From positions 62,001-126,000 of the IMG/VR virus record IMGVR_UViG_3300046542_000291: 64,000 nucleotides of DNA; one strand, 5' to 3'. This document shows positions 3,822 through 47,592 of this stretch, one piece after another. The position numbers and the translations under genes were made by a program. Numbering within the stretch: position 1 is the first letter of the stretch; every line of letters begins with the position of its first letter. The notes below the pieces were generated by a model. That model saw only the letters and a list, made by a program, of their open reading frames with translations, did no database searches and was not told where the DNA came from.

Positions 3822-4669
3822 GCTTTTTCCTTACGCTCATTGCGAGCAGCCAGATAGAGTTCAACCGCTTCGGCAAACTCTTTCCATTCCTGGACGTATG
3901 CTTCACCGAGGACTTGTGGCAAGACACGCCACAGTTCATCGTTAGATGGGAGACCTGCTTCGGCGCAGGAAATCTTCCAGCTGTTGCGAAGCTTACGCAG
4001 ACCGGACCCATAACGGGCTTTGTGCAAGATCACCGACCCGGACATTTCTGCCCCAGCTACCTTACCTAACTTCAAACCACCACCAGGGCCCAGCGAATGC
4101 CGAGAAGCATAGTTGATCAGATCACGGGTTAATGGACCCAGTTCATCAACGAGCTCTTCAAGGGTACGGGTACTGTCGTAGTGAATACCACCTGGGAAGT
4201 GACCCATCCAGAAAGGAAACATCTCTTTCAGATAGACCGCTTGCGCACGACGATGTTCACGGTGCTCTTCTTCACATTGTCGGGTGACGATTTCCTCGAA
4301 CTCTTTGGTCATGCCATTAAAGAATTGACCAGTGGCGTTCACGCTTTGCCACAGAATCGGCTTATACCGATCCGACAAAGCCACCCGGTCGATTACACGA
4401 CAGACTTCGATCATGTAAGCGGAATGAGGTTCTTCCCATTCTTCCAGAGTAGCCTGGTATTCTTCGAAGTTCTTTTTGATGGCCGGTTTGACGAAGTTGA
4501 TCAACGCCGGGAAGTCATGTGGATCTTGCGACCACTGTGCACCCAGCTTCATCATCTCCATGGGAATCAGATTCCCTTCGTTGGTGATGGTGTACGTCTT
4601 ATGGTCATCCGCTCGGCGAACACACCAAATGTAACCGAGCATCACACCGCGTTCTTTTTCAACTGCCAT
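3815..4669 (-). CDS. hypothetical protein, FPxW..PGG family
   Basis: EMFPFWMGHFPGG motif. Confidence 0.8.
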   Translation of the reverse strand: MAVEKERGVMLGYIWCVRRADDHKTYTITNEGNLIPMEMMKLGAQWSQDPHDFPALINFVKPAIKKNFEEYQATLEEWEEPHSAYMIEVCRVIDRVALSDRYKPILWQSVNATGQFFNGMTKEFEEIVTRQCEEEHREHRRAQAVYLKEMFPFWMGHFPGGIHYDSTRTLEELVDELGPLTRDLINYASRHSLGPGGGLKLGKVAGAEMSGSVILHKARYGSGLRKLRNSWKISCAEAGLPSNDELWRVLPQVLGEAYVQEWKEFAEAVELYLAARNERKEKAC

Positions 4670-11967: not shown

Positions 11968-12023
11968 ATCTGAGATCGGTTGAGATGAAGCGACATAAGC
12001 GGACCCAAATGGGCCCACTCAGT

Positions 12024-26694: not shown

Positions 26695-28071
26695 TCAATC
26701 GATTGGGGTACCTTCGTCATCGTTGTCAGGTTCACCAGCAACGACGTAGTCCAGATGGATGGCCACCTTAGACCCGTACGGTGATTGACGGCACAGTTCC
26801 CAAGCCCCATTACAGGTGGGTTTGTCACTGACAAACTTGAAACCCAGATCGTAGAGGTACTTCACAACCGGATCTTCCAGTTGCTTCTCGTGGATAGGTT
26901 TCAGGTTAATCCACCACGTGCGGTTGTTACGCCCTTCCGGCAAACGGAACTCCAAAAGAGTGTGGGCCAATGGAGCAGTGATCTCAATCACTTCGCCATT
27001 CCGCAGGGTAGTGCCTTGACGCTTCACGTGATCAGCCAGCCCGGTAGGAACAACGTTGCGGGTCATCAGGTAACCCTGAGTGATCGATGCAATGTCATTG
27101 GCTACGTAGCTGTGGAACTCCTCCGATTGGAACATGTCGCAGATACTGAGACGAACCATATCGGTGGACAGACGTTCGAAGTCAGAGTCGTAGTTCATGC
27201 GAATCTCATTAAGACGATTCTCCATGTACTCGATTTCGACGTCGGTTTGACTTTCTTCGTGAAGCTTCCGCAACCAGTTAGGCATTTCACCGTAGCGGCG
27301 AGAGATGAGGTGTGTCAACAAACGTAACGGACCGATATGAGAGACGCCGCCGGTCGACTTGTGGATCACGCGCAACATGCTCAGCAACTTGTCTTCAGTG
27401 ATACCGAGATGATCGGCTACGCAGTTGAAACGCACCGAGACACTGAACGCAGCGCGCTCAACCAGGTAGTTGTGCAGTTGCATGAACAAGTTCTGGTTCC
27501 GTGACATGGCTTCAGCATGAGCCATGGTGTCGACTTCGATGATCGGATCTTCAACACGATCCCAGCCATCACCAGGAATGTCATCAAGCGAAGTACCAAA
27601 ACTGTCATCCTCTGGAGGAGCGTCAGTCAGTTGTGGCGTACCGCCACTGGCGAGTACGTGACGAACATCCCAGAGAGGCTGGTGAAGCATGTCGTGGAGA
27701 TCCTTTGGGTCAGGAATAGCCATTGCCTGAACTTGAAGGATCTTTAGCGAGTTGATGAGTTGGGTGTAGAAGCCCCCGTCAGTCAAGCTTTCTGGCAAGA
27801 GACGGGCTACCCAACCAGGGCGCTGGTCAGTACCGGTACGGTAACCGATGAGCGCCAAAGCGGCGCATGTACTGGTGAAACGACTTGCACTGAAGTATTG
27901 GAACATTTCCTGCACTGTCGTTTCGACTGTGAGGATAGACAAATCAACCTGGTTGGCAAGCTCATCCATGGTGATTGGTGACAATGTCTTGACCCGGGGT
28001 GCCAGGATGGTGATAATGGCGATAGCGGTTTGTGTAAGCTTGCCAAGGTGTTCATTAGACAGCATGTGCAT
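26695..28071 (-). CDS. hypothetical protein with duplicated HTH-like domain
   Basis: AGGAG RBS at MHMLS; two related helical repeats. Confidence 0.8.
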   Translation of the reverse strand: MHMLSNEHLGKLTQTAIAIITILAPRVKTLSPITMDELANQVDLSILTVETTVQEMFQYFSASRFTSTCAALALIGYRTGTDQRPGWVARLLPESLTDGGFYTQLINSLKILQVQAMAIPDPKDLHDMLHQPLWDVRHVLASGGTPQLTDAPPEDDSFGTSLDDIPGDGWDRVEDPIIEVDTMAHAEAMSRNQNLFMQLHNYLVERAAFSVSVRFNCVADHLGITEDKLLSMLRVIHKSTGGVSHIGPLRLLTHLISRRYGEMPNWLRKLHEESQTDVEIEYMENRLNEIRMNYDSDFERLSTDMVRLSICDMFQSEEFHSYVANDIASITQGYLMTRNVVPTGLADHVKRQGTTLRNGEVIEITAPLAHTLLEFRLPEGRNNRTWWINLKPIHEKQLEDPVVKYLYDLGFKFVSDKPTCNGAWELCRQSPYGSKVAIHLDYVVAGEPDNDDEGTPID

Positions 28072-30789: not shown

Positions 30790-30806
30790 GTTGTTCTCAA
30801 AGAAAA

Positions 30807-30822
30807 GGGCCCCGAAGGGCCC
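30807..30822 (-). terminator. cUUCGg hairpin terminator
   Basis: GGGCCCTTCGGGGCCC-TTTTC. Confidence 0.8.
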
Positions 30823-30827
30823 GTAGA

Positions 30828-31196
30828 TTAATCGTCGCAGAGAATGCCGATGGAATCGTAGAAGCAAGCGGATGCAGAGCTCCACGATGTACCGTAGAAG
30901 CTCTCCAGATCCTCTTCAGAGGCGTTCTTTGTCAGCTCGGCATACATTGCCTTACCCAGACCAGTACGGCGCGCCTCTGGGCTTACGTAAGACATTACCC
31001 AGTAACGGCAGTGAAGCATTACAGCTACCGGTTTGCCATCCTTCATGGCCAACACGCTGTCTGTCGAAGGGATGTGAAAGTCGTCAGCTAATACCCGGCG
31101 AAGAATGAAGCTACGACCCGGGGTGTCTTTGCAGTGCAAGCCAGCTTCCAGTGCCAGCTGAAGTTTCTCTTCATGAGAGCCTTGATGAAATTCCAT
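30828..31196 (-). CDS. GNAT-family acetyltransferase
   Basis: motif A YVSPEARRTGLGKAMY and C-terminal ACFYDSIG. Confidence 0.8.
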   Translation of the reverse strand: MEFHQGSHEEKLQLALEAGLHCKDTPGRSFILRRVLADDFHIPSTDSVLAMKDGKPVAVMLHCRYWVMSYVSPEARRTGLGKAMYAELTKNASEEDLESFYGTSWSSASACFYDSIGILCDD

Positions 31197-31227
31197 GTTG
31201 ATTTCCTAGTTGCGTTTTGATGTGGTG

Positions 31228-31256
31228 ATTATACGGGTGTAACAAACAGTCGTCAA
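31228..31256 (-). promoter_or_regulatory. host sigma70-type promoter
   Basis: TTGACG-N17-TATAAT upstream of GNAT gene. Confidence 0.75.
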
Positions 31257-31278
31257 GCTTTTTATTGCTCCAAGAAAA

Positions 31279-31294
31279 GCCCCCTTTCGGAGGC
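31279..31294 (-). terminator. intrinsic terminator
   Basis: GCCTCC-GAAA-GGGGGC-TTTTC. Confidence 0.7.
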
Positions 31295-31303
31295 CTTCCT
31301 TAG

Positions 31304-31504
31304 TTACGCACTACGAAGAAGAGCTTCTTCCCGGAGAGCGTCCCGTTCCTTATCGGAGAGGCTAAATGCAGCCAGTACACGATCAACGGTTTCTTCGGCG
31401 GTGTCCTCGGATTCCCCGACTTCACCAACAGCCGCGCTGACGATGGAGACCAGATACGAAACACGTACCTGAGTGGACTTGAACAGCAGCTCTTCGTATT
31501 TCAT
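31304..31504 (-). CDS. small acidic hypothetical protein
   Basis: 66 aa, AGGA RBS, own promoter and terminator. Confidence 0.75.
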   Translation of the reverse strand: MKYEELLFKSTQVRVSYLVSIVSAAVGEVGESEDTAEETVDRVLAAFSLSDKERDALREEALLRSA

Positions 31505-31537
31505 TTACTTCTTCCTGTTTGCTTGTTTGGAGATTAG

Positions 31538-31566
31538 ATTTTAAGGCATAGCTCAAGGGGAGTCAA
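31538..31566 (-). promoter_or_regulatory. host sigma70-type promoter
   Basis: TTGACT-N17-TAAAAT upstream of 31304..31504. Confidence 0.7.
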
Positions 31567-31585
31567 CCCTTTTCTTCAACTATTT

Positions 31586-31825
31586 TTATTCCTTACTGAT
31601 AATGACGCATGAAGTTTCACGGCGGAGACGACCGTCTTCAGATACGCTCCGATTGCCAATGAGCTTCGTAGGCAAGCCTGCGTGTTGACCACGAGCGTAG
31701 TCTTGACACATAGGCAAGGCATCAGGTCCTTCGAACTGCAAGGTACCTGTCGCTACCATTCCCGGCGGGGGACTGGCCATGTTTCCGATTGTGGTGAGAA
31801 CGGTGAAGAATGCAACCTTGATCAT
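31586..31825 (-). CDS. small exported 2-Cys protein
   Basis: similar to 3564 and 35658. Confidence 0.7.
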   Translation of the reverse strand: MIKVAFFTVLTTIGNMASPPPGMVATGTLQFEGPDALPMCQDYARGQHAGLPTKLIGNRSVSEDGRLRRETSCVIISKE

Positions 31826-32307
31826 CGTCTGGTTCCTTTACGGCTGACATTCCCACGGTCAGTGAGAATCTGGGTTAGAATGGATGAGGAGTAATACTGT
31901 ATCTCTGTGTTGCGTGGTTCACCGTCGACGGTAAAGTCCTCGTAGATTTTGATGACCAGGTGAGTGAGTACCCGACTGATACGGGCGTAGTTGACCGGGT
32001 ATGGCTTGAAGGAATCCTGTTGGATCGACAAGACAAACACGTTATTGCTTTCTTGTGGGAAGTCCAGCTTTACAATTTCACTCCAACCACTGGTGTGTGC
32101 CAGTTGAATGGTAAGGAAGCGAAGGTTGTCTGTGTCATCGGCCTTTGCATCAGCCAGGATGGTGATCGAATAGTTAGCCTTGCCATCAGGCACGATAGTG
32201 TTGAACTTACCATGACGCAGGAACATATCTGCGTAGCCAGCCAACAGGATCTTTTGCAGAGCAAATTGTAGTTGCCCTAAGTGAATTTCTTTGCTAAACT
32301 CTTTCAT
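31822..32307 (-). CDS. hypothetical early protein, 'L..GY' family
   Basis: ALQKILLAGYADMFLRHGKFNT. Confidence 0.8.
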   Translation of the reverse strand: MKEFSKEIHLGQLQFALQKILLAGYADMFLRHGKFNTIVPDGKANYSITILADAKADDTDNLRFLTIQLAHTSGWSEIVKLDFPQESNNVFVLSIQQDSFKPYPVNYARISRVLTHLVIKIYEDFTVDGEPRNTEIQYYSSSILTQILTDRGNVSRKGTRR

Positions 32308-32339: not shown

Positions 32340-32348
32340 GTAATATAG
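32340..32348 (-). promoter_or_regulatory. phiKZ-type early promoter
   Basis: CTATATTAC. Confidence 0.85.
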
Positions 32349-32419: not shown

Positions 32420-32764
32420 TTAACCTTCGACTGTTTCAACATCCAGGAAAAGCTTGACAGCATCACCGACTACGGGTAACATCTTGTCACTCACCAGAAT
32501 GATGACATCGCCCGGGTAGAGCAAAGTGGTGTACTGGTGGTTGTCGCCATGGGTCAACTGCCAGACGACGTAGTCAACAGCGGCATCAGCCCGGAAGAAG
32601 ACTTTATCCCGCGTCAGGACACGTTGAAAGTTTTCGAGATCCAGACCAACTGTTGGGTAGAACTGTTGCCCGTCGGTCTCCCCATCCCCGCACACTTCGG
32701 CATGGCCGACTTGAAGACCAGAGTGGGTAGTACCGAATTTGTCTTTGATGATTACTTTAGTCAC
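32420..32764 (-). CDS. hypothetical protein (domain shared with 44001..45344)
   Basis: IIKDKFGTTHSG...LYPGDVIILVS vs KITDALEHSYEG...MEAGDLILLYS. Confidence 0.7.
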   Translation of the reverse strand: MTKVIIKDKFGTTHSGLQVGHAEVCGDGETDGQQFYPTVGLDLENFQRVLTRDKVFFRADAAVDYVVWQLTHGDNHQYTTLLYPGDVIILVSDKMLPVVGDAVKLFLDVETVEG

Positions 32765-32776
32765 GACAACACTTCC

Positions 32777-33202
32777 TTACATTACGCGGAATTCACCGCT
32801 AGCCAGTTCAACGATCTTGATTTGCTCACCGCCACGGATCTGATGGTCCGCTGAAGCCGTTAGCATTTGGGTACTGCCATTGAAGCTGACCAGCAGGTTA
32901 CACCCCCAGGTTTCTTTGCCCATGGAGTTACCAACCGCACCGCCAGCCAAACCACCTGCGATACCACCCAGCAGGCCACCAGCACCTTTGCCGAATAACA
33001 TCTTGCCAACGATAGCGCCACCCACAGCACCAACACCACCACCCACTACCGTTTTGCCAGTAGTGTCTTCTTTGTTTACCAGTTGACACGATGCCGTATC
33101 AACGGTAGCATGAGTTACCGATTTGACGCCTTCTGCTTTGGCGCAGGCAGACAGCAACATTGCAGCAGTGGCTACCGCAACCAGCAGTACACGATTTTTC
33201 AT
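32777..33202 (-). CDS. glycine-zipper 2TM lipoprotein (SlyB-like)
   Basis: lipobox LLSAC; GGGVGAVGGAIVG...GGIAGGLAGGAVG. Confidence 0.85.
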   Translation of the reverse strand: MKNRVLLVAVATAAMLLSACAKAEGVKSVTHATVDTASCQLVNKEDTTGKTVVGGGVGAVGGAIVGKMLFGKGAGGLLGGIAGGLAGGAVGNSMGKETWGCNLLVSFNGSTQMLTASADHQIRGGEQIKIVELASGEFRVM

Positions 33203-34240: not shown

Positions 34241-35641
34241 TTATTCTTCGTCGTCTTTCTTCTTTTCCAAATACTGAGTACTTACAGCTTTAAAGCTGAA
34301 CACTCGGTCGGTGCACTTGAACACCAGTCCTTCGCGGTAAGTTTTCTTCGGTTGTTTCGGATCGACATTGAACGCACGCGGACCTTCAGCCATCAGGAGA
34401 ATATCCTGAATAGTAGTGCCCACCGGAATAACAAACTTCTCATGCATGACCGGGACGTAAGGAAGGCCGATGGCAGCACATACACCACGAGCTTCTTCCG
34501 GCAACAACTCCTGGCTACCATTGCGGTATACGCTGTAGACATGGTATTCAACATCTTCCACGCCTTCGAAGCCAGACTGGATATCTGGACCGATCAGCTC
34601 GCCTTGAACAGTGATGTATTCACCTGTCTCTTCCTGGTACGCCTTCAGCTTCTCAACCACCTTGTTCTTGGTGACGTAGCGGGTGAAGTTCCGGGAGGTG
34701 CTGTCGCCAATACCGGTGTTGGCTTTCCATTCAGGGACGTGAAGGTTGTTCATACGGAACGCCCATTTGCCATCTTCGTCCTTGAAGAACCACGACTTCG
34801 GTTTTAGGAAGTTGCGGTTGCGCGCCAGGAGGGTACCGATCCAGTAACGGATCTGATCTGGTTTGGACCATTCCTCGTCACCGATAACCAACTCGTAGTT
34901 ACGCGAGCAAACGCCAGTACGAACACCACCATCATCCAGGCAGAATACCGTCATGGAGCTACCGTCGAGTTTCCAGGTAACTTCGAATTCAGTGCCTTCC
35001 GCCTTTGCCGCTTCGAACGCGACTGTCTTGTTCTGGATACGATCCTGATCAGACTTGAGCAGTTGCTTCGGCCATGGCAGGAGAGCATTACCCACGTTAC
35101 CGAGGATCTTACGTACCAGACGCATGTACCAGCCAGAACCAGCTGCAGCCTGTTGCGCCGGCGACATGAGTGGCTTGGCTGCAAACTTCAGGATGCCCAG
35201 CTCCAACGTCATGTTGGTTTCAGCTGGAAGGTCTTTGTATTTCTCTGGGAGTGGTACAACCAACCCCTGGGCCAGCTCCTTACGAAGACGGAGCGTGCGC
35301 AAACGGTGATAAGCCTTACCGTTGATCAGGCGGTTATCGGAACGGCGTGCCTCGAGGAACCCGAACAGTGGGTTATCGATTGGCAACAGCGAGTCGATCT
35401 CGCAGTACACCACACGGTCACCCTTCTTGTATTCGTCCAGCTTGACCACGCACTGCCAGCCGCCGATGATTGCCAGAGACAAGGCATCAGCATTTGGATG
35501 TTTGATCACGTCGTCAAGTACGACGATACGCGCCAGTTTGCGGTCGGTTTCAACCACCCCGTTCCCCTCACGGATTGGTTTGAGTTCAGCAGCTACATCG
35601 GGGGTAGCGGTTGCGACTTCGATCTTTTCTACGACAGACAT
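34241..35641 (-). CDS. ATP-dependent RNA ligase, DRB0094/Rnl5-like
   Basis: N-terminal OB-type HPNADAL...GW...YCEIDS; motif I TWKLDGSS; CSRN; VQGELIGP; EGLVFK; SFKAVS. Confidence 0.9.
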   Translation of the reverse strand: MSVVEKIEVATATPDVAAELKPIREGNGVVETDRKLARIVVLDDVIKHPNADALSLAIIGGWQCVVKLDEYKKGDRVVYCEIDSLLPIDNPLFGFLEARRSDNRLINGKAYHRLRTLRLRKELAQGLVVPLPEKYKDLPAETNMTLELGILKFAAKPLMSPAQQAAAGSGWYMRLVRKILGNVGNALLPWPKQLLKSDQDRIQNKTVAFEAAKAEGTEFEVTWKLDGSSMTVFCLDDGGVRTGVCSRNYELVIGDEEWSKPDQIRYWIGTLLARNRNFLKPKSWFFKDEDGKWAFRMNNLHVPEWKANTGIGDSTSRNFTRYVTKNKVVEKLKAYQEETGEYITVQGELIGPDIQSGFEGVEDVEYHVYSVYRNGSQELLPEEARGVCAAIGLPYVPVMHEKFVIPVGTTIQDILLMAEGPRAFNVDPKQPKKTYREGLVFKCTDRVFSFKAVSTQYLEKKKDDEE

Positions 35642-35657
35642 GTTTCTTCCTTAGGTC

Positions 35658-35906
35658 TTATTGCAAAGGTTTGCAGGTTACAGTGATTTTTGCCATACGG
35701 CTCGACAGTGCGCCACCATCGACTCTCGATTCAACGTAGTCTTTGGTTTCTTTGACGAGGTAAGGCTTCATGCCGTATGTCTCTACGACTTGTTCAATTG
35801 CGGCTGGACACGTGTTGGCATCTGACAGTTCTGTGACTGTTGGTGCACCACCAGGTCCTGCGCCTGTATTGAACGCAAATGCGATAACAAGTAACGCTTT
35901 CATCAT
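35658..35906 (-). CDS. small exported 2-Cys protein
   Basis: hydrophobic N-terminus, TCPAA...TCKP. Confidence 0.7.
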   Translation of the reverse strand: MMKALLVIAFAFNTGAGPGGAPTVTELSDANTCPAAIEQVVETYGMKPYLVKETKDYVESRVDGGALSSRMAKITVTCKPLQ

Positions 35907-37186
35907 TACCCCTTAACGCAGAGAACCTGCTTCAGCGTGTGGACGATCTCGACGAGTTCAGCCTGAGCTGCCATCACGTCTTCGATGTTCTTGTACGCCT
36001 TCGGGGTCTCATCGAGCACACCTTCATCTTTACGGCATTCAACACCAGCCGTATCGCGGATGTGATCTTCGATGGTGAAGTTACGGTTAGCCGCTTTACG
36101 CGACATCACACGACCAGCACCATGCGAACAGGAGCAGAACGACTCACGGTTGCCCTTACCACGAACGATGAACGACTTCGCACCCATCGACCCTGGGATA
36201 ATACCCAGAGTACCTTCCTCGGCGTTTACGGCACCTTTACGGGTAACCAGAACGTTCTCACCGAAGTGACGTTCCTGGGACACGTAGTTGTGGTGGCAAT
36301 TGATTGCCGCCATGTCGGTGTCGATTGGCAGGTTCAGGGTTTTGTGGATCGCCCCCAGAACAGCCTTCATCATGAGCGTACGATTCAGTGCTGCGAAACG
36401 CTGTGCCCACGATACCGCCTGCAGGTAGTCGTCGTAGTACTTGGTACCGTGTGGCAGGTAAGCCAGATCTTGGTCTGGTAGATGGATAAAGAAACGACCC
36501 ATCTCTTCCTTTGCCTTGTTGATGAAGTACTGACCGATCGCATTCCCGATACCACGGGAACCAGAGTGCAGCATTACCCACACACGCTGTTCCTCGTCCA
36601 AGCACAGCTCAACGAAGTGGTTACCGGTACCGAGAGTACCCACATGGTTCCACGCCCGTTGTGCAGCCTTGGTGAGCTTCGGGTGTTTCTCAACGATTTG
36701 GTTCAGTTGCGTTCGCAACTTCTCCGCTTCAGCAGCGATCATGATGTCCTTGTTATCGAACACAGTCACCTTACCGAAAGCACCACGGTCGTTTGGACCA
36801 CCGTTGTCAGTACGGCCATGTGGTACTACCGCTTCGATAGCTGCCCGCAGATGGCCGAGGCTATCTGGCAGTTGGTCTGCACCGAACGTCAAGCGACGAG
36901 CGGCCATTCCGCACCCGATATCGACCCCCACCGCAGCGGGAATGATTGCACCTTTAGTAGCAATGACGCTACCGACAGTGGCACCCAACCCGAAGTGTAC
37001 GTCCGGCATTACTGCAACGTGCGAATGGATGAACGGCAACGACGCCAGGTTCTTCAACTGCTTGACTGCGGTCTCTTCGACTGGAACCCCCACGGTCCAG
37101 CCTTTAATCGGCTTCGAACCCGGTTCAGGTTCGCCACCAATGATTTCGAAAGACTTATCTTGCTGCTGGGATTTCTTTTGTTTCAT
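35906..37186 (-). CDS. rtcB: RtcB RNA ligase (3'-phosphate/5'-OH)
   Basis: MPDVH, GVDIGCG, GTLGTGNHF, HSGSRG, HHNY, SHGAGR, DETPKAYK. Confidence 0.97.
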   Translation of the reverse strand: MKQKKSQQQDKSFEIIGGEPEPGSKPIKGWTVGVPVEETAVKQLKNLASLPFIHSHVAVMPDVHFGLGATVGSVIATKGAIIPAAVGVDIGCGMAARRLTFGADQLPDSLGHLRAAIEAVVPHGRTDNGGPNDRGAFGKVTVFDNKDIMIAAEAEKLRTQLNQIVEKHPKLTKAAQRAWNHVGTLGTGNHFVELCLDEEQRVWVMLHSGSRGIGNAIGQYFINKAKEEMGRFFIHLPDQDLAYLPHGTKYYDDYLQAVSWAQRFAALNRTLMMKAVLGAIHKTLNLPIDTDMAAINCHHNYVSQERHFGENVLVTRKGAVNAEEGTLGIIPGSMGAKSFIVRGKGNRESFCSCSHGAGRVMSRKAANRNFTIEDHIRDTAGVECRKDEGVLDETPKAYKNIEDVMAAQAELVEIVHTLKQVLCVKG

Positions 37187-37218
37187 AACTACCTCACGCG
37201 GATGGAAAGAGGGTGTAG

Positions 37219-37470
37219 CTAAACGTTGTTTATTTCTTTGATGTAAGCAAAGGCCTCATCACGGTAGAAGACATGACCATTATGGTTACCCATGTCCGCT
37301 ACCGCTTCATTGAGTTCCCTTTCGAACCACCAGTACCACTCCGGCCCCTTTGGTTGATAACGGGCACACCACTTAGCGTATTCCAGCAAGTTGCATGCAC
37401 AGTTACCACGAGGGACCTGGGGCTCTTTAGGTGGAGTCTTACCAAAGACTCGGCGTAACCATTCGACCAT
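37219..37470 (-). CDS. hypothetical protein
   Basis: TAATG-coupled. Confidence 0.7.
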   Translation of the reverse strand: MVEWLRRVFGKTPPKEPQVPRGNCACNLLEYAKWCARYQPKGPEWYWWFERELNEAVADMGNHNGHVFYRDEAFAYIKEINNV

Positions 37471-37850
37471 TACGCCACTGCCGCCTCACCAAACGTCAGC
37501 TCTTTGTAAAGCTGCGGTTTCGGAGGCATCAGGGTGATACCACTGCAAGCACTGAAATGGGCCTGAATGGTTTCGTTGCGTTCCTGGCGGATGTAATCGT
37601 AGTTGAACAGGAACCCGTCCAACTCAACTTGATTAATCGCCTTGGTCGGATCGATGTAACTGGTTTCCCACGGACCAACCTCATGGTTAACCGAATGGAA
37701 CAGCACACCGGCTGTTTTCTCAGCCAGGGATTGCATCCCGGTCATGACCTTGGAATAGAAGCGTTCGATCAACAAGCGTTGCTGCTTAGGAGAACTGGCA
37801 CTCCAGATAGCCGAGCCATAATGTTCTACAACCTGTTCTGTACGTTCCAT
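37470..37850 (-). CDS. hypothetical protein
   Basis: GAGGT RBS. Confidence 0.75.
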   Translation of the reverse strand: MERTEQVVEHYGSAIWSASSPKQQRLLIERFYSKVMTGMQSLAEKTAGVLFHSVNHEVGPWETSYIDPTKAINQVELDGFLFNYDYIRQERNETIQAHFSACSGITLMPPKPQLYKELTFGEAAVA

Positions 37851-37865
37851 CGGATACCTCTTGAG

Positions 37866-39182
37866 TTATGCCGCTTTGAGAAGGGGCAATGTGGGGATGG
37901 ATGCAATAAAGGCATCCGGGTCACGGCGATGTTCAAGGAACAACGCTTGCAGGTCACAGCCCGCTATGTCCTCGAAACACCCACTGAATTCGTAGGTATG
38001 CTCCGGGAACACAACATGGATGTACTCGCGTACTTCTACATCGGTCAAGTAACCGATTTCCATCAGGTGGTCCACTCGACCTTTACGAACTACCGCATCA
38101 TCGATCTTGTCGATGTGGTTGGTAGTCATGAAGATCACCGTGCCGTTCAGCGAAACCACCCCGTCCAACACGTTGAGCACTTTGCTCAGGGTCAACCGGG
38201 AGAACTCTTCGTTCAGGGCTTCGAAGATGTTTGCTTCCGCAACTTTCTTCTTGGCTGGCGCCGCCGGTAAAGCACCGAGTGTTTCCACCGGTTCAACCTT
38301 TGGCTTCTTCGGTGTACGCGCCTTGAAGGCAGCCGAACTGTCGAAGTCTTCGATCAACACCACCGAGTTCGGGGGCAGGTGACTGAGGGCTTTCTCGAAT
38401 GACGTATCGTCCATCGAGTTGATGTTGATGGTGCAGATGTTCTTGCCGAAGTGGGCAGCCAGTGCCTTGATGATACTGGTCTTGCCTGTACCTGGCTTAC
38501 CGTGGATAACAAACGTCGACTTGTAAGCCATGCCACGTTCGTTGTACCACTCTTCACTTTCGTAGAACTGTTCCAGCTCGAAGATCAACTTATCCTTCGT
38601 AGCTTTGTTCATCGCTACCGTCTTGAGAGGACGCTTCTTGATCTCACACAGGTACTGCCAGCCTTGATCACCGGTGTACGTATAGATGCGGGACTTCAGT
38701 GAGTTCTCTTTCGGCATGAACGAACTGACCAGGTCCTTCAACACTTGTTGATTACGACCCCAGGTGAAAATCGTGACGCGTTCTTTCTCGTTGGTTGACC
38801 CTTGACTGTTCAATGCTTCTTTCTTGAACCAGTACAGGCGTCTCTTATAAACGAAGAAGTGTGTGCCGAAACCAGGGCCTATAATTGTCCGGCTGTTGGG
38901 TGACTCCAAGCTGATGTTCCGCGAGTAGCGTGACCAGGGTTGTTCACAGAACCACTGCATGAAGGACGTGAAGTGAACACGGTCTTCTGACCAAGCGGTG
39001 GCGTTGTTGAACGTCAGGCTGGTCATGCATTGTTTCAGTGTGGCCGAGTACACCGTTTTGGGCACCTGCCGCAGTATCGCGTACAGGAACCCCATTAGGC
39101 CAGCAAGGACGATGCCTGCTGCCCAGGGGGAAACCTTGTTGAATGTCAGGTATTGCTGCTGAAGCCAATCAATAAATTCCAT
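37866..39182 (-). CDS. BCS1-like membrane-anchored AAA+ ATPase
   Basis: N-terminal TM, PGFGTHFFVY (BCS1_N-like), WYNERG, Walker A GKPGTGKT, Walker B VLIEDFD, LNVLDG, MTTNH, RKGRVD. Confidence 0.9.
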   Translation of the reverse strand: MEFIDWLQQQYLTFNKVSPWAAGIVLAGLMGFLYAILRQVPKTVYSATLKQCMTSLTFNNATAWSEDRVHFTSFMQWFCEQPWSRYSRNISLESPNSRTIIGPGFGTHFFVYKRRLYWFKKEALNSQGSTNEKERVTIFTWGRNQQVLKDLVSSFMPKENSLKSRIYTYTGDQGWQYLCEIKKRPLKTVAMNKATKDKLIFELEQFYESEEWYNERGMAYKSTFVIHGKPGTGKTSIIKALAAHFGKNICTININSMDDTSFEKALSHLPPNSVVLIEDFDSSAAFKARTPKKPKVEPVETLGALPAAPAKKKVAEANIFEALNEEFSRLTLSKVLNVLDGVVSLNGTVIFMTTNHIDKIDDAVVRKGRVDHLMEIGYLTDVEVREYIHVVFPEHTYEFSGCFEDIAGCDLQALFLEHRRDPDAFIASIPTLPLLKAA

Positions 39183-39250
39183 GTCACATAGCTCTCTGTG
39201 TTAAACCGGCATAGATCGCCCCTTCCCTGGAGCGGTTCTATGTTGGGGTG

Positions 39251-41032
39251 TTATGCAGCTTCGCGCAGGGTTGCACGAACTTCTTCGAAGGTCACTTCGT
39301 TCGGGAACGTGCCGTCTTTGTAGATCGGACGCAGTTCACCCGAGTGAGTGTCGAGGTCAGCGATTTCGAACTTCTGCTCTTGGAGCAGCTCAAAGTCACC
39401 GGCTTCGTTCTTCACAACCTTCAGGAAGCCCTTGGCCGACTTCTTGTTGGTTTCGCCTTCGGTCTTCGGCGCCTTGAACAGCTCAACGAACACGTCGTCC
39501 ACTTGAACGGCGGTAGCCTTGATGGCGTAGCCGAAGGTGTCACGAGTGTTGTGCTGATAGGTGTACGAACCGATACCCAGAACCCAGTTGCACGAAGCGA
39601 AGCCTTTCTTCATCAGGCGACGCATGATTTCCTGGGTACGTTCCACAGTGATCGAATCACCGTAGATCAGGCCAACACGTTCGTGCAGCACTTTGAAGCC
39701 CTTGTCGGTCATGGTGCCACCGAAAGTGTTCCACAGGCATTCCACCGCACCGATCTGTTCGGCGTTCAGTTCTACCGGAGCCCACAGGTAGCCCAGAGCC
39801 GTGTAGTACTTCTCGGCGTCTTCAGCACTGATCGGATTTTCGTAGCGGGTTGCTTTGTACGTCATGCCGTTCAACAGAACGTACTCGACGTCTTTCGCTT
39901 TGCCGTTGTTGACCAGTTCGCTGAATTCCAGCGAGTTGTGAACTTCCACACCGCAGATGACTTCAACAGGATCACCGGAATCCGGACGGAACACCACTTT
40001 GGCCAGGCCGTTGGCGTCTGGTTGACGAGCCAGGATTTCTTCCTTCAGGGAAGGGGCAACAATGGTCAGGACACCCCAGAAGTCGAAGCTGTCGCAGACC
40101 AGGCTGATGATGCCAGTAGGACACTTGACGGTAATGGCATCCAGGATGAACTGACGCTCGGCCAGCAGTTGCGCTTTGCCGTATGCATCGGGATCGAGGT
40201 CACCACCAGTCAGGCCTTTTTCCAGCAGCCACTTGGTCATGTTGTACAGGATGTTCGAAGTAGCAACGGCGTGTTCGGTAGCACGCACCGATACAGCCAG
40301 GAACTCGACGTCGCTGTTGGCGAAGTACATGTCTTCGGCGTAGTCGATGGCCGGCAGGGTATCGGTACCCACGAAGCTGGTCAGGTGACCGGCGCCAGTA
40401 CGAGCAGCATCTTCAGGACCGGACAGGCCACGGAAGGCGAAGTCATGCCCTTGCAACGCAACGAAGTCACGAGGCGAACCAGTCAGGTCAGCGAAGTGTT
40501 CCAGGATGCGACGGTATTCGTAAGCGATGGTGGCGTTGCAGACCATTTTCCAGATCAGCGACGACATCAGGGTTTCCAGGTAGTTCACTACCCAGAAGAA
40601 TTCCGGTACGGTGTTGTAGATCACGTAGCCCGGAACGTTCATGTTCAGGCGAGAGCCTTCCGGTACCGACAGGATGGTAACCGGTAAGTAACCCAGGTCA
40701 TGCAGTGCTGCCATGGCTTCGATGTCAACCATACCTTCACCGAGGTAGTTCTTCATGCGGCGAGCGTAGCGACGGATCACTTGCTCTTTCGGCTTGCTGA
40801 AGAACGAATCGTGCCACAGGCCGTGAACTTCACGCATCACGCCTTGGATACCGAACCAGACGACTTTGCTATCCCAGAGGTAGGACTGGGACTTGCTGCC
40901 CTTGAACAGACGGTCTGCACGTGGAGTGCCGTTACCGTAGGCGAAGTTGGTGCCGTTCGGGTACAGAGGGCCGTGACCCATTTTGTAACCGTCTGCTGCA
41001 GTCGGGCCAAACAGTTTGAAAGAAGTGCTCAT
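39251..41032 (-). CDS. NAMPT-family phosphoribosyltransferase (probable NARP1 Namat)
   Basis: ADGYKMGH, HDFAFRG, GTDT, ATEH, RPDSGDP, IYGDSIT, GIGSYTYQ, TRDT, KKSAKG; start moved to MSTSF. Confidence 0.9.
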   Translation of the reverse strand: MSTSFKLFGPTAADGYKMGHGPLYPNGTNFAYGNGTPRADRLFKGSKSQSYLWDSKVVWFGIQGVMREVHGLWHDSFFSKPKEQVIRRYARRMKNYLGEGMVDIEAMAALHDLGYLPVTILSVPEGSRLNMNVPGYVIYNTVPEFFWVVNYLETLMSSLIWKMVCNATIAYEYRRILEHFADLTGSPRDFVALQGHDFAFRGLSGPEDAARTGAGHLTSFVGTDTLPAIDYAEDMYFANSDVEFLAVSVRATEHAVATSNILYNMTKWLLEKGLTGGDLDPDAYGKAQLLAERQFILDAITVKCPTGIISLVCDSFDFWGVLTIVAPSLKEEILARQPDANGLAKVVFRPDSGDPVEVICGVEVHNSLEFSELVNNGKAKDVEYVLLNGMTYKATRYENPISAEDAEKYYTALGYLWAPVELNAEQIGAVECLWNTFGGTMTDKGFKVLHERVGLIYGDSITVERTQEIMRRLMKKGFASCNWVLGIGSYTYQHNTRDTFGYAIKATAVQVDDVFVELFKAPKTEGETNKKSAKGFLKVVKNEAGDFELLQEQKFEIADLDTHSGELRPIYKDGTFPNEVTFEEVRATLREAA

Positions 41033-41045
41033 TACTTTGTTTTCC

Positions 41046-41921
41046 TTACGCATTGATCCAGGTGAGTTTGTTATCGACAACACCGTCTGGGCGAGTACTG
41101 CCCTGTGCTGTCGGATGGAACGAGTTGGTGGTGTAGACGTGGTCGTACTTTTCAGTAACCAGGTCGAAACCGTACGAGAAGATCCCGTGCGTTACCAACA
41201 GTTCCAATCGTGCTGGATTATGCTTGCGGATTTCTTCAGCCAGTTGGATGAAGGTCCGTCCACCATCACAGATGTCGTCACAGACCAGCAGTCGTTTGCC
41301 AGTTACATCGGCATCGAACTTGGTCTTGGTGATTTCCATCGTTTCCAGGTCACGCTCTTTAGTAGCCGTGATGTAACCAGCGCAGCCCAGGTGAGCAGCC
41401 AACGCTTTCACTTTCTTGACAGCCCCTGCATCAGGAGCCACCAGCCAGGTATCGTGCAGTTCGTTTGCCGTAGCATCCAACATGTGCACGATGTCAGCCT
41501 GGGTCTTGACGATCACGCGGTTGATCAACGCCGGCGTAGTGTCGCTGTGCGGGTCCAAAATGGTCACACTGACGAACTCACAGAGGTTGATCAACTTCGC
41601 TGCTACCGCAATACCCAACGACTCCCCGGGGTTACACACGCGGTCCTGCCGGGCGTAAGGGACATAAGGGATATATGCGCTTACCGGTACGTCGGGACGA
41701 ATGCGACGGATCGCATCGGTAACGTGCAGTAAAGCGAGGAAGTCAGTTGGGGTACGGAGGTTGGCCATGACTTGAATGTCCATGCAACCGCGGATTTTGT
41801 TGTGGAACTCTTTCGGAATAAGTGGGTTAACTTCCCCACCTTTGAACGTGCTCACGTCAACGATAGTCTGCGCCACTCCCCAGTGGTCGCCATTGCCGCG
41901 TCGGATACTTAAACGAATCAT
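41046..41921 (-). CDS. ribose-phosphate pyrophosphokinase family (probable NARP1 Adps)
   Basis: FKGGE, PYVPYARQDR, DPHS, APDAGA, DDICDGGRTF, VTHGIFS. Confidence 0.9.
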   Translation of the reverse strand: MIRLSIRRGNGDHWGVAQTIVDVSTFKGGEVNPLIPKEFHNKIRGCMDIQVMANLRTPTDFLALLHVTDAIRRIRPDVPVSAYIPYVPYARQDRVCNPGESLGIAVAAKLINLCEFVSVTILDPHSDTTPALINRVIVKTQADIVHMLDATANELHDTWLVAPDAGAVKKVKALAAHLGCAGYITATKERDLETMEITKTKFDADVTGKRLLVCDDICDGGRTFIQLAEEIRKHNPARLELLVTHGIFSYGFDLVTEKYDHVYTTNSFHPTAQGSTRPDGVVDNKLTWINA

Positions 41922-46218: not shown

Positions 46219-47592
46219 TTAAACTGCCACTGGAGCAGGGATATGGGGATGGCTATCGTAACCGACCAATTTAAAGTCGTTGATATCCATGTCCAGAACA
46301 TCACGCTTATTCGGATTTATCCAAATAGTGCACGGCTGTTTTGGTGTACGGGTTTGTTGCAGAGCCACCTGGTCCATGTGGTCCAGATAGATGTGGGCAT
46401 CACCAACTTGATGAATCAGTTCTTCAGCCCAGTAGTTGCACTCATGAGCCAACAGGTGAGTGAGAATCGAGTACTGGGTGAGATTGAAGGGCGCGCCCAA
46501 AAAGATGTCATTGGAACGCATCCAGAACAAACACTTCAATGCACGACGTGGAACCTTCATGCTGTCGAGGTCGAGGTGTTGTTCCTCTTCGGTGCGGTCA
46601 GGAAAGCGGAGCATCTTGCTGAGGTTCATGTACATACCGTACAGAGGCTCCTCAGGATGGTCTGCTGCCTGTTTGTAGATCTCGGCCTGGTGACGATCAT
46701 GGATCTTGTCGTAGATCGCCCAGCGCTCTTCCAGGGACAGCACACGGGTCCAGAACTGAACCATGGCATGGCATGGCGGCAGGGCTTGTTGATCCACGTA
46801 AGCCGGATTCCAGAAACACAGAATGTGACGTCGGGAGTCAGGGCTGTTCTTCAGCGAGTGCTGCAGATCTTTAAACTGGTCGATGGTTCGGGTAATGATG
46901 AACTTACCCTTGTTCCGGCAAAGCTTCTTGTAACCCAGCTTCTGCATCTCCGGCCATTCTTTTGGCGAGATAACGCGGGTGTCTTCCAGGTTACGGATCA
47001 TCTTGCCGTAAACGTGACCCAGAGGACCTTCAGTCACTTCCTGGTCGGAAATACCAATGTGGCGGAAGAAGTCCTTCCACAACGGATGTTCCTTGTCATC
47101 GTGCATTGCCTGGGCATTGTCCGTCGACGTCTCGATCAAATAGTTCGGGATCATCTTGTCGCTACCAGGCACTTCAGTGTAGTTGACGTAAGAATGAAAC
47201 TTCTCGCCAACATTACCAAAGTGAATACCCGCAGGATAACCCTTCAGTTCGATCTCACCCCAACCGAAGTGCTTGCGCTTGTATTGCTTGCGCATTTCAG
47301 CCGCAGTACGAGGACGGTACTTGGCCCCTTCTGGCTTGACCCAGTCATCCCAGATGCCACAGTTGTTGTCTTTCAGGTACTTGACGTTGGTGTCGCCGGA
47401 GAGCACCCACTTGAGTTCGACCTTGTTGTCGTTCTCAGGTACGAACTTTGTCGTTGGTCTGGCTACGGTCCAGTCGGAGATGTCGTAGCGATGCATGGCG
47501 CCGAAGCTGGAGATCGTTCCTGTATTGGTCCGGTCCCCCTTGGCCACGCCGTGCTTCAAAGTGTTTTCCTGGTACTGAAGGTATTGATGCAT
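46219..47592 (-). CDS. thyA: thymidylate synthase (ThyA) with large insertions
   Basis: DRTNTGT, IWDDW, LGHVYG, PDSRR, ALPPCH, RSNDIFLGAPFN, GDAHIYLDH, C-terminal PVAV. Confidence 0.95.
   Translation of the reverse strand: MHQYLQYQENTLKHGVAKGDRTNTGTISSFGAMHRYDISDWTVARPTTKFVPENDNKVELKWVLSGDTNVKYLKDNNCGIWDDWVKPEGAKYRPRTAAEMRKQYKRKHFGWGEIELKGYPAGIHFGNVGEKFHSYVNYTEVPGSDKMIPNYLIETSTDNAQAMHDDKEHPLWKDFFRHIGISDQEVTEGPLGHVYGKMIRNLEDTRVISPKEWPEMQKLGYKKLCRNKGKFIITRTIDQFKDLQHSLKNSPDSRRHILCFWNPAYVDQQALPPCHAMVQFWTRVLSLEERWAIYDKIHDRHQAEIYKQAADHPEEPLYGMYMNLSKMLRFPDRTEEEQHLDLDSMKVPRRALKCLFWMRSNDIFLGAPFNLTQYSILTHLLAHECNYWAEELIHQVGDAHIYLDHMDQVALQQTRTPKQPCTIWINPNKRDVLDMDINDFKLVGYDSHPHIPAPVAV

What the first reader, a model, noticed from the sequence alone, without database searches (positions are those of the whole stretch)
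30807..31566. Two consensus host sigma70 promoters driving single-gene cassettes
TTGACG-17-TATAAT precedes the GNAT and TTGACT-17-TAAAAT precedes a 66-aa acidic gene; each gene has its own terminator. PhiKZ-like phages transcribe with their own RNAPs and shield their DNA from host proteins (established for phiKZ). These are either recently captured morons or genes expressed only when host RNAP reaches the DNA, e.g. on shell failure or in a carrier state. A GNAT could acetylate host defence or translation factors (inference).
Basis: partly seen in the sequence, partly recalled or inferred. Interest (0 to 1): 0.6.

Follow-up and report, generated by a model that had tools for sequence, protein, structure and literature searches.

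The report
Host-type promoters in a nucleus-forming phage
A giant phage that carries its own RNA polymerases and a DNA-shielding "nucleus" nevertheless keeps two near-perfect host (sigma-70) promoters. One of them has been conserved in front of the same tiny gene in at least 13 related phages, so host RNA polymerase may read this DNA at some stage.

Summary
On the minus strand, TTGACT-17-TAAAAT lies 33 nt before a 66-aa gene (31304-31504). TTGACG-17-TATAAT lies 31 nt before a 122-aa GNAT gene (30828-31196). Each gene is followed by a GC hairpin with a T-run. These two sites are the two best sigma-70 matches in the whole 310-kb genome.

The genome is a chimallivirus: it encodes chimallin, split multisubunit RNAPs, and 18 exact copies of the phiKZ-type early promoter core TATATTAC.

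The "recently captured moron" reading fails for the small gene. Its family has 16 members. In all 13 phage genomes or contigs examined, the gene is preceded by a sigma-70-type promoter and followed by a hairpin. One copy is a perfect TTGACA-17-TATAAT. The flanks have diverged, but the most conserved promoter positions, including A-11 and T-7, have not.

The gene also sits in a native early operon, so it is not host-only.

The GNAT is a rare accessory gene. Its one relative lies at the same position in another phage and has no promoter of its own.

Best reading: these are selected host-RNAP promoters that add host control to phage control. When they fire is unknown, and no expression data exist. 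Interest 0.6.

The parts
31561..31566 (-). -35 hexamer TTGACT of the small-gene promoter. An A-rich tract lies just upstream (31567-31590).
   Evidence: TTGAC is invariant in the four-way alignment. Across the 13 orthologous promoters the hexamer is TTGACN in 11, TTTACA in L049 and TTAACA in L050.
31538..31543 (-). -10 hexamer TAAAAT, 17 nt after the -35 and 33 nt before the ATG.
   Evidence: A at position 2 and T at position 6 are invariant in all 13 orthologous promoters.
31304..31504 (-). 66-aa acidic protein, predicted four-helix bundle, function unknown.
   Evidence: Family of 16 members, all on jumbo-phage-sized or short metagenomic contigs. AF2 pLDDT 97. No Pfam, PHROG, PADLOC or NCBIfam family. 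No informative fold match.
31270..31303 (-). Intrinsic-terminator-like hairpin: 15-bp stem, GAAA loop, T-run in and after the 3' arm.
   Evidence: dG -23.9, z -4.7. A GC hairpin follows the orthologous gene in all 13 loci.
31257..31266 (-). A-tract AATAAAAAGC abutting the -35 of the GNAT promoter, resembling an UP element.
   Evidence: Read. The same A-tract + GC motif precedes the -35 in L048 and L049, and similar A-tracts precede it in RVTF4 and D6. The comparison with UP elements is from my own knowledge.
31251..31256 (-). -35 hexamer TTGACG of the GNAT promoter.
31228..31233 (-). -10 hexamer TATAAT, 17-nt spacer, 31 nt before the ATG.
   Evidence: Best sigma-70 PWM score in the genome (17.3 bits).
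30828..31196 (-). 122-aa mini-GNAT (acetyl-CoA-binding fold) carrying the RRTGLG motif.
   Evidence: The one relative, P0002 (44% identity), is on phage contig L009 at the same position.
30807..30822 (-). Terminator hairpin GGGCCC-TTCG-GGGCCC followed by TTTTCTTT.
32340..32347 (-). Native phage early-promoter core TATATTAC, heading the operon that runs into the 66-aa gene.
   Evidence: The motif equals the published phiKZ and 201phi2-1 early-promoter core (PMC7058600, Table 2).
31586..32307 (-). Two upstream genes of that operon (161 aa at 31822-32307, 79 aa at 31586-31825). No hairpin lies between them and the small-gene promoter.
   Evidence: The fold of 31560-31600 shows no structure.

Best explanation
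These are genuine sigma-70-type promoters, kept by selection, that allow the host RNA polymerase holoenzyme to transcribe two short monocistronic units in a chimallivirus genome. Each unit is promoter, Shine-Dalgarno, ORF, intrinsic terminator.

The unit for the 66-aa four-helix protein is an old, conserved feature of a clade of plant- and soil-Pseudomonas chimalliviruses (this phage, Psa21, D6, RVTF4 and metagenomic relatives). That gene is under dual control. Phage virion RNAP can reach it by read-through from the native TATATTAC early promoter at 32347. Host sigma-70 RNAP can start about 7 nt after the -10, giving a leader of about 25 nt.

The GNAT unit is a lineage-specific accessory gene placed in the same slot, directly behind the small gene's terminator. 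In this phage it has its own near-consensus promoter and terminator.

Shown:
- the sequence anatomy;
- its statistical exceptionality within the genome;
- conservation of the promoter architecture across about nine independent lineages;
- its distinctness from the phage's own promoters;
- the absence of any phage sigma-factor domain.

Inferred:
- that this matters when phage DNA is accessible to it, for example before or outside full enclosure, after damage to the EPI vesicle or shell, or in a persistent state;
- what the two proteins do. My guess is that the small protein binds a host or phage partner, and that the GNAT acetylates a target or senses acetyl-CoA.
For: 1. The two sites rank first and second of about 620,000 positions scanned. 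0.014 such sites are expected in promoter-appropriate positions.
2. Orthologous promoters in 13 genomes or contigs:
   - TTGACA-17-TATAAT (12 of 12) in L047
   - TTGACA-16-TAGAAT in L045 and L046
   - TTGACA-17-TAAACT in Psa21
   - TTGACG-17-TATTAT in D6 and L044
   - TTGACT-17-TAAACT in L009
   - TTGACG-17-CATAAT in L048
   - TTTACA-17-CATAAT in L049
   - TTAACA-17-TACAAT in L050
   - TTGACA-17-CATAAT in L051 and RVTF4
   The spacer is 16-17 nt. The -10 ends 27-34 nt before the ATG (68-71 nt in D6 and L044). Spacers and flanks are diverged, and the proteins are only 36-50% identical to the window's.
3. The invariant positions are T-T-x-A-C in the -35 and A-11 and T-7 in the -10. A-11 and T-7 are the bases that sigma region 2 flips out (PMC7598289).
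4. The site is the top-scoring sigma-70 match in 8 of 11 relatives' loci on both strands, and second or third in the other three.
5. It is not a native phage promoter. A PWM built from 74 native early sites gives the window's genome 28 sites above 25 bits and nothing between 5 and 25 bits. The three sigma-70-type sites score -22.7, -2.0 and -5.4 bits. The hairpin + TTATGYCG motif is absent from these regions.
6. No sigma70_r2 or sigma70_r4 domain is found in the genome, while the control genomes ring.
7. A third unit of the same design lies at genome 12604-12243. It has a positional counterpart in Psa21 with a conserved promoter.
8. A-tracts abut the -35 in many copies.
9. Published hints that some phiKZ-like phages need host RNAP: RSL2 and RSF1 are rifampicin-sensitive (PMC7598289), and 32 phiKZ transcription start sites have no phage motif (PMC10914365).
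Against: - There are no expression data. No RNA run holds this DNA.
- Chimallivirus DNA is enclosed first in the EPI vesicle and then in the nucleus. phiKZ infection is rifampicin-insensitive (PMC13282480, PMC10612078, PMC10914365), so host RNAP is not expected to meet this DNA in a normal cycle.
- The small gene can be expressed without this promoter, by read-through from the early promoter.
- The GNAT promoter cannot be tested by conservation: the only other GNAT (L009) has none.
- In 10 of 13 relatives an inverted repeat with covarying arms straddles the -10. This shows a second constraint on this DNA that I cannot explain.
- The PWM frequencies come from my memory of E. coli promoter compilations, and the gene calls are my own heuristic.
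Confidence: 0.6

Rival explanations
1. A phage RNA polymerase reads these sites. vRNAP, or nvRNAP with an unknown specificity factor, would use them as a minor promoter class that merely resembles sigma-70 promoters.
For: - Some native early promoters of the clade carry a -35-like TTTACT, TTGACT or ACTCC element 17 nt before TATATT.
- phiKZ nvRNAP has a sigma-like fifth subunit (PMC13282480).
- phiKZ middle promoters need an unidentified factor (PMC10612078).
- 32 phiKZ transcription start sites lack a known motif (PMC10914365).
Against: - All 74 exact-core native early promoters share the flanking C (CTATATTAC) in at least 70% of sites per genome. The sigma-70-type sites lack the TATATTAC core and score negative on the early PWM.
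- Only three such sites exist per genome, far fewer than a temporal class would need.
- The published middle and late motifs are described as distinct from host consensus (PMC10612078).
- The invariant bases are exactly those recognised by sigma-70.
Confidence: 0.15
2. The conserved DNA serves another purpose, and the promoter resemblance is a by-product. Candidates are an RNA hairpin in read-through transcripts (processing or stability), a cruciform, or an operator.
For: An inverted repeat with covarying arms encloses the -10 in 10 of 13 relatives, with z from -2.2 to -5.6 in 7.
Against: - The window's own copy and L048 lack the dyad yet keep the hexamers.
- A hairpin does not explain an invariant TTGAC at a fixed 16-17 nt from TAnnnT, nor the A-tract upstream.
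- The GNAT promoter and the third unit have no dyad.
Confidence: 0.1
3. The GNAT promoter alone is a neutral relic or a chance match. In this reading the GNAT cassette is a moron that brought a promoter from its donor, and the promoter has no role in this phage.
For: - The GNAT is present in only 2 of 13 loci.
- The L009 copy has no promoter or terminator of its own.
Against: - It is the best sigma-70 match in 310 kb, correctly placed between a terminator and a Shine-Dalgarno sequence. 0.004 such sites are expected.
- GC and GC3 equal the genome average.
- No bacterial donor family is detectable. The closest relatives are phage proteins.
- It sits next to a demonstrably selected promoter of the same type.
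Confidence: 0.1
4. The pair is a toxin-antitoxin-like module, with a small upstream antitoxin and a downstream GNAT toxin as in TacAT or AtaRT.
For: - The gene order is small protein, then GNAT.
- The pair is adjacent in two diverged phages.
Against: - The small protein occurs without the GNAT in 11 of 13 loci.
- It has no RHH or DUF1778 match.
- A strong terminator and separate promoters divide the two genes.
- The GNAT has 122 aa and its nearest feature neighbours are PanZ/PanM-size GNATs, not tRNA-acetylating toxins.
- No PADLOC hit.
Confidence: 0.04

Closest known systems
Phage morons (autonomous promoter-ORF-terminator units, first defined in lambdoid phages such as HK97; discussed for lytic Pseudomonas phages in PMC10914365)
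   Same: A single gene flanked by its own host-type promoter and an intrinsic terminator, embedded between genes of a longer operon. The GNAT unit has the patchy distribution typical of morons.
   Different: The host phage is a strictly lytic, nucleus-forming phage with its own RNAPs. Base composition is not atypical. The small-gene unit is core to a clade rather than sporadic, and it lies on the same strand inside an early operon.
Host-RNAP early promoters of T4 and T7 (A1-A3), and phage N4's use of host RNAP for late genes despite an injected vRNAP
   Same: Near-consensus -35 and -10 hexamers, a 17-nt spacer and an upstream A-tract. N4 shows that a phage with a virion RNAP can still assign a gene class to host RNAP (PMC10612078).
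   Different: Those phages depend on host RNAP and carry many such promoters. Here there are three in 310 kb, and the DNA is thought to be physically inaccessible to host RNAP.
Native phiKZ-type early promoters (TATATTAC core, read by vRNAP)
   Same: Located upstream of early-region genes on the same strand. A few native sites also carry a TTGACT or TTTACT element 17 nt upstream.
   Different: The native core TATATTAC is absent from the sigma-70-type sites (it defines all 74 native sites used for the PWM), and they score negative on the native PWM.
Small GNAT-fold proteins of the PanZ/PanM type and phage GNATs
   Same: Size of about 120-130 aa, the acetyl-CoA-binding motif, and the GNAT fold. 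GNATs in RNAP-encoding jumbo phages have been noted as possible host-takeover factors (PMC13282480).
   Different: No PanZ Pfam hit at the thresholds used. Only one sequence relative is known. The substrate, and whether it is catalytic at all, are unknown.

Membership tests
Sigma-70-dependent bacterial promoter | -35 hexamer close to TTGACA | tested here: met
   TTGACT and TTGACG, 5 of 6 each. TTGAC is kept in 11 of 13 orthologues.
Sigma-70-dependent bacterial promoter | -10 hexamer close to TATAAT, with A at position 2 and T at position 6 | tested here: met
   TAAAAT (5 of 6) and TATAAT (6 of 6). A-11 and T-7 are invariant in all 13 orthologues.
Sigma-70-dependent bacterial promoter | Spacer of 17 +/- 1 nt | tested here: met
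   17 nt in both window sites. 16-17 nt in all orthologues.
Sigma-70-dependent bacterial promoter | Placement giving a plausible leader with a ribosome-binding site | tested here: met
   The -10 ends 33 and 31 nt before the ATG, and AGGAAG and AGGAAA sit in between.
Sigma-70-dependent bacterial promoter | Initiation by host sigma-70 holoenzyme, sensitive to rifampicin | not testable with these tools
   No RNA run holds the sequence. No published transcriptome of Psa21 or D6 was found.
Intrinsic (factor-independent) terminator | GC-rich hairpin followed by a T/U-run directly after a stop codon | tested here: met
   hairpins at 31303-31270 and 30822-30807. Such hairpins are general punctuation in this genome (CCTTCGGG occurs in 50 intergenic regions), so they are not special to these units.
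GNAT acetyltransferase superfamily | Sequence match to GNAT models above the curated cut-off | tested here: met
   PF13673 at 23.9 bits (cut-off 23.6) and PF00583 at 23.5 bits (cut-off 20.7), which is marginal. PDB acetyltransferases at E 0.002.
GNAT acetyltransferase superfamily | Acetyl-CoA pyrophosphate-binding motif R/Q-x-x-G-x-G/A | tested here: met
   R76-R-T-G-L-G81, conserved as R-R-K-G-Y-G in the L009 homologue. The motif definition is from my own knowledge.
GNAT acetyltransferase superfamily | GNAT fold | tested here: met
   Atlas model: TM 0.68-0.76 by the query to ten GNAT clusters. All feature neighbours are GNAT. My own AF2 model is only pLDDT 67.5.
GNAT acetyltransferase superfamily | Acetyl transfer to a defined substrate | not testable with these tools
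Phage moron | Own promoter and terminator | tested here: met
Phage moron | Sporadic distribution among related phages | tested here: not met
   The small-gene unit is present in all 13 loci. The feature is met only for the GNAT (2 of 13).
Phage moron | Atypical base composition indicating recent acquisition | tested here: not met
   GNAT: GC 0.52, GC3 0.57. Small gene: GC 0.53, GC3 0.52. Genome genes: GC 0.506 +/- 0.026, GC3 0.579 +/- 0.056.
Chimalliviridae (nucleus-forming phiKZ-like phages) | Chimallin (nuclear shell protein) | tested here: met
   A 634-aa ORF at genome 308450-310240, 51% identical to PhiPA3 gp053, E 2e-188.
Chimalliviridae (nucleus-forming phiKZ-like phages) | Split multisubunit RNAP beta and beta' genes | tested here: met
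   73-77% identical to RVTF4, D6, Psa21 and PhiPA3.
Chimalliviridae (nucleus-forming phiKZ-like phages) | PhuZ tubulin | tested here: inconclusive
   A 322-aa ORF with a sub-threshold tubulin match (15.8 bits, E 0.002).
GNAT-RHH toxin-antitoxin module | Upstream RHH/DUF1778 antitoxin that co-occurs and is co-transcribed with the GNAT | tested here: not met
   No such domain. The small gene occurs alone in 11 of 13 loci. A terminator lies between the two genes.

The most novel reading that the evidence does not exclude
In this clade of chimalliviruses, host sigma-70 RNA polymerase gains access to the phage genome under a defined condition. That condition could be the first moments of injection, a leaky or attacked EPI vesicle or shell (for example under Juk- or Avs5-type defence), or a persistent carrier state. 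A conserved 66-aa four-helix protein would be kept under a host promoter as a sentinel or fail-safe made exactly then. In this phage it would be joined by a GNAT and by a third small protein under the same kind of promoter. This would be the first host-RNAP-dependent gene class in a phage family defined as transcriptionally autonomous.
Probability: 0.25. Interest if true: 0.85.

Novelty: new variant of a known kind. Interest (0 to 1): 0.6.

Why it matters
Chimalliviridae are the textbook case of host-independent transcription and of physical shielding of phage DNA. A host-type promoter held by selection across many such phages is unexpected. It implies that host RNA polymerase does meet this DNA often enough to matter.

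This turns a general question into a concrete test with named nucleotides and culturable phages (Psa21, D6, RVTF4). The question is whether the compartments are ever open to host proteins, and what the phage does when they fail.

It also singles out a conserved, confidently folded small protein of unknown function as the likely payload. Finally, it gives a rule for finding further such genes: scan chimallivirus genomes for top-scoring sigma-70 sites that lack the native TATATTAC core.

Tried and rejected
- Chance: rejected.
- Native early promoter variant: rejected by the PWM.
- A phage-encoded sigma factor: none found with Pfam r2 and r4 models.
- Known RNA family in the region: none; two sub-threshold Rfam matches at E 0.3-0.7.
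- Recent capture: GC and GC3 are normal.
- Homologues of the GNAT:
  - tblastn of INPHARED phages found nothing.
  - The word search found only the protein itself.
  - The exhaustive search found one real relative, P0002, plus two weak hits. P0003 is a 302-aa tandem GNAT on a 1.2-kb contig and is uninformative.
- Function of the small protein:
  - Pfam, PHROGs, PADLOC and NCBIfam were empty or noise.
  - Foldseek against PDB gave no hit (best E 2.9).
  - VIA-align gave a best Z of 7.1 to archaeal-virus coat helices, within the noise for helical bundles.
  - Atlas structure rows include NusB-like bundles at TM 0.54-0.65 by the query. This is a lead only.
- Third unit:
  - Its 89-aa protein has no hit in phages.
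  - A degenerate promoter pattern found only Psa21 in IMG/VR.
  - blastn found only spurious Lactococcus hits.
  - D6 has other genes at that site.
- The PhiPA3 syntenic region has no such promoter or gene.
- Expression data: the look-up of sequencing runs returned only two DNA runs (a rhizosphere metagenome that may be the source, and a 0.05-share hit).
- Complex prediction was not run. I do not claim that the small protein and the GNAT bind.
- My hairpin counter misses terminators whose T-run lies in the stem, so its figure of 61 of 307 junctions is a lower bound.
- Ceyssens 2014 (PMC4178840) is not held. The phiKZ promoter consensus is cited through PMC7058600, PMC8244752 and PMC10612078.
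Full report
**What is there.**
All genes in this part of the window run on the minus strand. Reading that strand, the order is as follows.
- A 161-aa gene (31822-32307) and a 79-aa gene (31586-31825).
- An A-rich stretch.
- TTGACT, 17 nt, TAAAAT (31566-31538).
- A 33-nt leader with AGGAAG.
- A 66-aa ORF (31504-31304).
- A 15-bp hairpin directly after the stop codon (31303-31270; dG -23.9, z -4.7).
- The A-tract AATAAAAAGC.
- TTGACG, 17 nt, TATAAT (31256-31228).
- A 31-nt leader with AGGAAA.
- A 122-aa ORF (31196-30828).
- GGGCCC-TTCG-GGGCCC plus a T-run (30822-30807).
- The next gene, starting at 30792.

**More than chance.**
The window is bases 62,001-126,000 of a 310,396-bp virus record with direct terminal repeats. 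I scanned the whole genome on both strands with a sigma-70 position weight matrix. Its hexamer frequencies come from my memory of the E. coli compilations, with spacers of 15-19 nt.
- The GNAT site (17.3 bits) and the small-gene site (16.1 bits) are the two best matches in the genome.
- By simple counting, 17 sites reach 10 of 12. Only these two are both intergenic and about 30 nt upstream of a same-strand start.
- I simulated 6 Mb under a first-order Markov model trained on the genome's own intergenic DNA. It predicts 0.014 sites of at least 16.1 bits in the 8,277 positions lying 15-80 nt upstream of starts. Two are observed. For at least 15.0 bits, 0.09 are expected and three are observed.

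**The genome is a chimallivirus.**
- It encodes split RNAP beta and beta' fragments. The beta' piece is 73-77% identical to those of Pseudomonas phages RVTF4, D6, Psa21 and PhiPA3.
- It has a chimallin homologue: a 634-aa ORF, 51% identical to PhiPA3 gp053, E 2e-188.
- It has a weak tubulin match.
- No sigma70 region 2 or region 4 domain is detectable.

Its own promoters are easy to see.
- The 8-mer TATATTAC occurs 18 times. All copies are intergenic and all are on the minus strand.
- It sits in a longer consensus, ATTGAAAGC ... TTTAAA .. CTATATTAC ... GTG. This matches the published early-promoter motifs of phiKZ and 201phi2-1 (PMC7058600, Table 2; PMC8244752).
- A second motif, TTATGYCG, lies directly after terminator hairpins. 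It has 50 copies, 42 of them intergenic. It resembles the TATG late promoters of phiKZ nvRNAP (PMC10612078).

A PWM built from 74 native early sites splits the window's genome cleanly: 28 sites score above 25 bits and nothing lies between 5 and 25 bits. The sigma-70-type sites score -22.7, -2.0 and -5.4 bits. They are therefore not variants of the phage's own early promoter.

**The small-gene unit is conserved.**
tblastn found homologues of the 66-aa protein in Psa21 and D6. A profile search found 16 family members, 66-80 aa long, several on contigs of 305-318 kb.

I fetched the context of eleven of them, plus RVTF4 by synteny with the RNA ligase gene. Every one of the 13 loci has three features:
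- a sigma-70-type promoter, whose variants are listed in the For line;
- a -10 ending 27-34 nt before the ATG (68-71 nt in D6 and L044);
- a GC hairpin right after the stop codon.

In 8 of 11 relatives' loci this is the best sigma-70 match on either strand, and in the rest it is second or third.

The loci fall into about nine lineages with unrelated spacer and flank sequences. Proteins are 36-50% identical to the window's. The conserved bases are T, T, A and C of the -35 and A-11 and T-7 of the -10. A-11 and T-7 are the two bases that sigma region 2 captures (PMC7598289). This pattern is what purifying selection on a sigma-70 promoter would leave, so the "recent moron" reading fails for this gene.

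The syntenic 10 kb of PhiPA3 has neither the gene nor such a site. The unit therefore belongs to the Psa21/D6/RVTF4 branch.

**Dual control.**
- The nearest upstream native early promoter is at 32347-32340. No hairpin lies between it and the 66-aa gene.
- In contig L009 the TATATTAC core lies about 30 nt upstream of the -35.
- The small gene is therefore an early gene that phage vRNAP can reach. The host-type promoter is an addition, not the sole driver.

**The GNAT.**
- Pfam matches are marginal but over the cut-off.
- The R-R-T-G-L-G acetyl-CoA motif is conserved.
- PDB acetyltransferases match at E 0.002.
- All Atlas feature and structure neighbours are GNATs. These include PanZ/PanM-size proteins and phage GNAT clusters, at TM 0.68-0.76.
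- My own model is poor, at pLDDT 67.5.
- An exhaustive search of 1.8 billion representatives found one real relative, P0002 (117 aa, 44% identity). It lies on a 35.5-kb contig of the same phage clade, directly behind the small gene's terminator. It has no promoter of its own and no terminator after it.
- The other eleven loci have no GNAT in this slot.
- GC and GC3 are at the genome average.
- The GNAT is an accessory gene of a hotspot behind the small gene. Its near-perfect promoter is specific to this phage and cannot be tested by conservation.

**The small protein.**
- AlphaFold2 with the 16-member alignment gives a very confident four-helix bundle, pLDDT 97.1.
- Neither Foldseek nor the exhaustive VIA-align search (best Z 7.1) gives a match above what short helical bundles reach by chance.
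- Atlas rows with NusB-like bundles are only a lead.
- No family library knows it.
- Its function stays open. Its size, acidity and fold suit a protein-binding role. That last point is inference.

**A third unit.**
The fourth-best sigma-70 site of the genome lies at genome 12604-12576 and reads TTGACA-17-TAAACT. It sits behind a terminator, 36 nt before an 89-aa ORF with AGGAGA, and another terminator follows. Psa21 has a positional counterpart: TTGACA-17-TATACT, a 68-aa ORF and a terminator. Its promoter DNA is recognisably conserved, and a TATATTAC promoter lies just upstream. D6 lacks it.

**How it most likely works.**
Host sigma-70 holoenzyme binds these sites and makes short monocistronic mRNAs ended by the hairpins.
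- Shown: the architecture, its rarity, its conservation, and its distinctness from phage promoters.
- Inferred: The difficulty is biological. Chimallivirus DNA sits first in the EPI vesicle and then in the nucleus, and phiKZ is rifampicin-insensitive (PMC13282480, PMC10612078, PMC10914365). Selection nevertheless implies use. Candidate situations are incomplete enclosure early on, breach of the vesicle or shell by defences such as Juk or Avs5 (PMC13282480), or a persistent state. Pseudolysogeny of phiKZ-like phages is something I recall from the literature, not something I checked.

The literature leaves some room. RSL2 and RSF1 are rifampicin-sensitive (PMC7598289). 32 phiKZ start sites have no phage motif (PMC10914365). 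Neither the D6 nor the Psa21 paper mentions promoters, and I found no paper describing host-type promoters in these phages.

**An unexplained extra.**
In 10 of 13 relatives a 6-12-bp inverted repeat with covarying arms encloses the -10. The window's copy lacks it. It may be an RNA hairpin in read-through transcripts or a DNA structure that modulates the promoter. It is the main reason I keep a rival in which the DNA has another role.

**Verdict.**
- The elements themselves are ordinary: a sigma-70 promoter, an intrinsic terminator and a GNAT.
- Their conserved presence in a nucleus-forming phage is not ordinary, and as far as I could find it is not described.

Noticed in passing
L011:2243-2604 (= genome G000:C1:12243-12604, outside the window), minus strand: A third unit of the same design. 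In order: terminator, TTGACA-17-TAAACT, AGGAGA, an 89-aa orphan ORF (L011 2539-2270), terminator. Psa21 has a positional counterpart at 27522-27830 (TTGACA-17-TATACT plus a 68-aa ORF) with conserved promoter DNA. D6 has none.
   Followed up: partly
relatives' loci: L008 about 2950-2990, L045-L047 and L049-L051 about 1940-1985, L052 about 4575-4605: An inverted repeat of 6-12 bp straddles the -10 hexamer of the small-gene promoter in 10 of 13 phages. Arm sequences differ between phages (covariation), and z reaches -5.6. It is absent from the window's copy (31520-31560) and from L048. Its meaning is unknown.
   Followed up: partly
window 3515, 16735, 24539, 32347, 42596, 56241, 58661 (minus strand): Seven of the genome's 18 exact TATATTAC early-promoter cores lie in the window. 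All are intergenic and fall into two subtypes: ATTGAAAGC..TTTAAA..CTATATTAC and AAAAAATCTCAGATCTATATTAC. The second subtype often has TTTACT or TTGACT 17 nt upstream, which is why three native sites score 12.4 bits on the sigma-70 matrix.
   Followed up: yes
genome-wide; in the window at 11998, 29293, 42404, 46192, 51535, 55024, 55704 (minus strand): The motif TTATGYCG directly follows GC tetraloop hairpins (GCCTCCCTTCGGGGAGGC type). It has 50 copies, 42 of them intergenic. These are probably combined terminator and nvRNAP (TATG-type) promoter punctuation.
   Followed up: partly
window 32454-32482 and 33083-33111, plus strand: Two further strong sigma-70-type matches, TTGACA-17-TAACAT and TTGACA-17-TAGCAT (15.1 bits each, ranks 5 and 6 in the genome). 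They lie antisense inside coding sequence within 1.9 kb of the two promoters. The clustering is unexpected, but conservation could not be tested and it may be chance.
   Followed up: partly
window 32777-33202, minus strand: A 141-aa ORF with a signal peptide and lipobox (LLSAC) and a glycine-zipper-rich middle. It is a likely phage-encoded lipoprotein. Only one partial phage homologue was found (pPa_SNUABM_DT01).
   Followed up: partly
window 34241-41083 and 46219-47592, 59234-61354, minus strand: A cluster of nucleic-acid repair and NAD genes: RNA ligase, RtcB, an AAA-type ATPase, nicotinamide phosphoribosyltransferase, NAD-dependent DNA ligase, and a 457-aa thymidylate synthase. The thymidylate synthase match spans positions 33-308 of a 335-position profile, which suggests an insertion (an intein or other inserted domain?).
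   Followed up: no
D6 genome 51.6-56.7 kb (L007 and neighbours): Five of the seven best sigma-70 matrix scores of phage D6 fall in the 5 kb syntenic with this locus. At least one of them is clearly a native TATATTAC promoter carrying a TTGACT -35-like element. One (TTGACT-17-TAGACT) lies 21 nt before a 230-aa gene.
   Followed up: no
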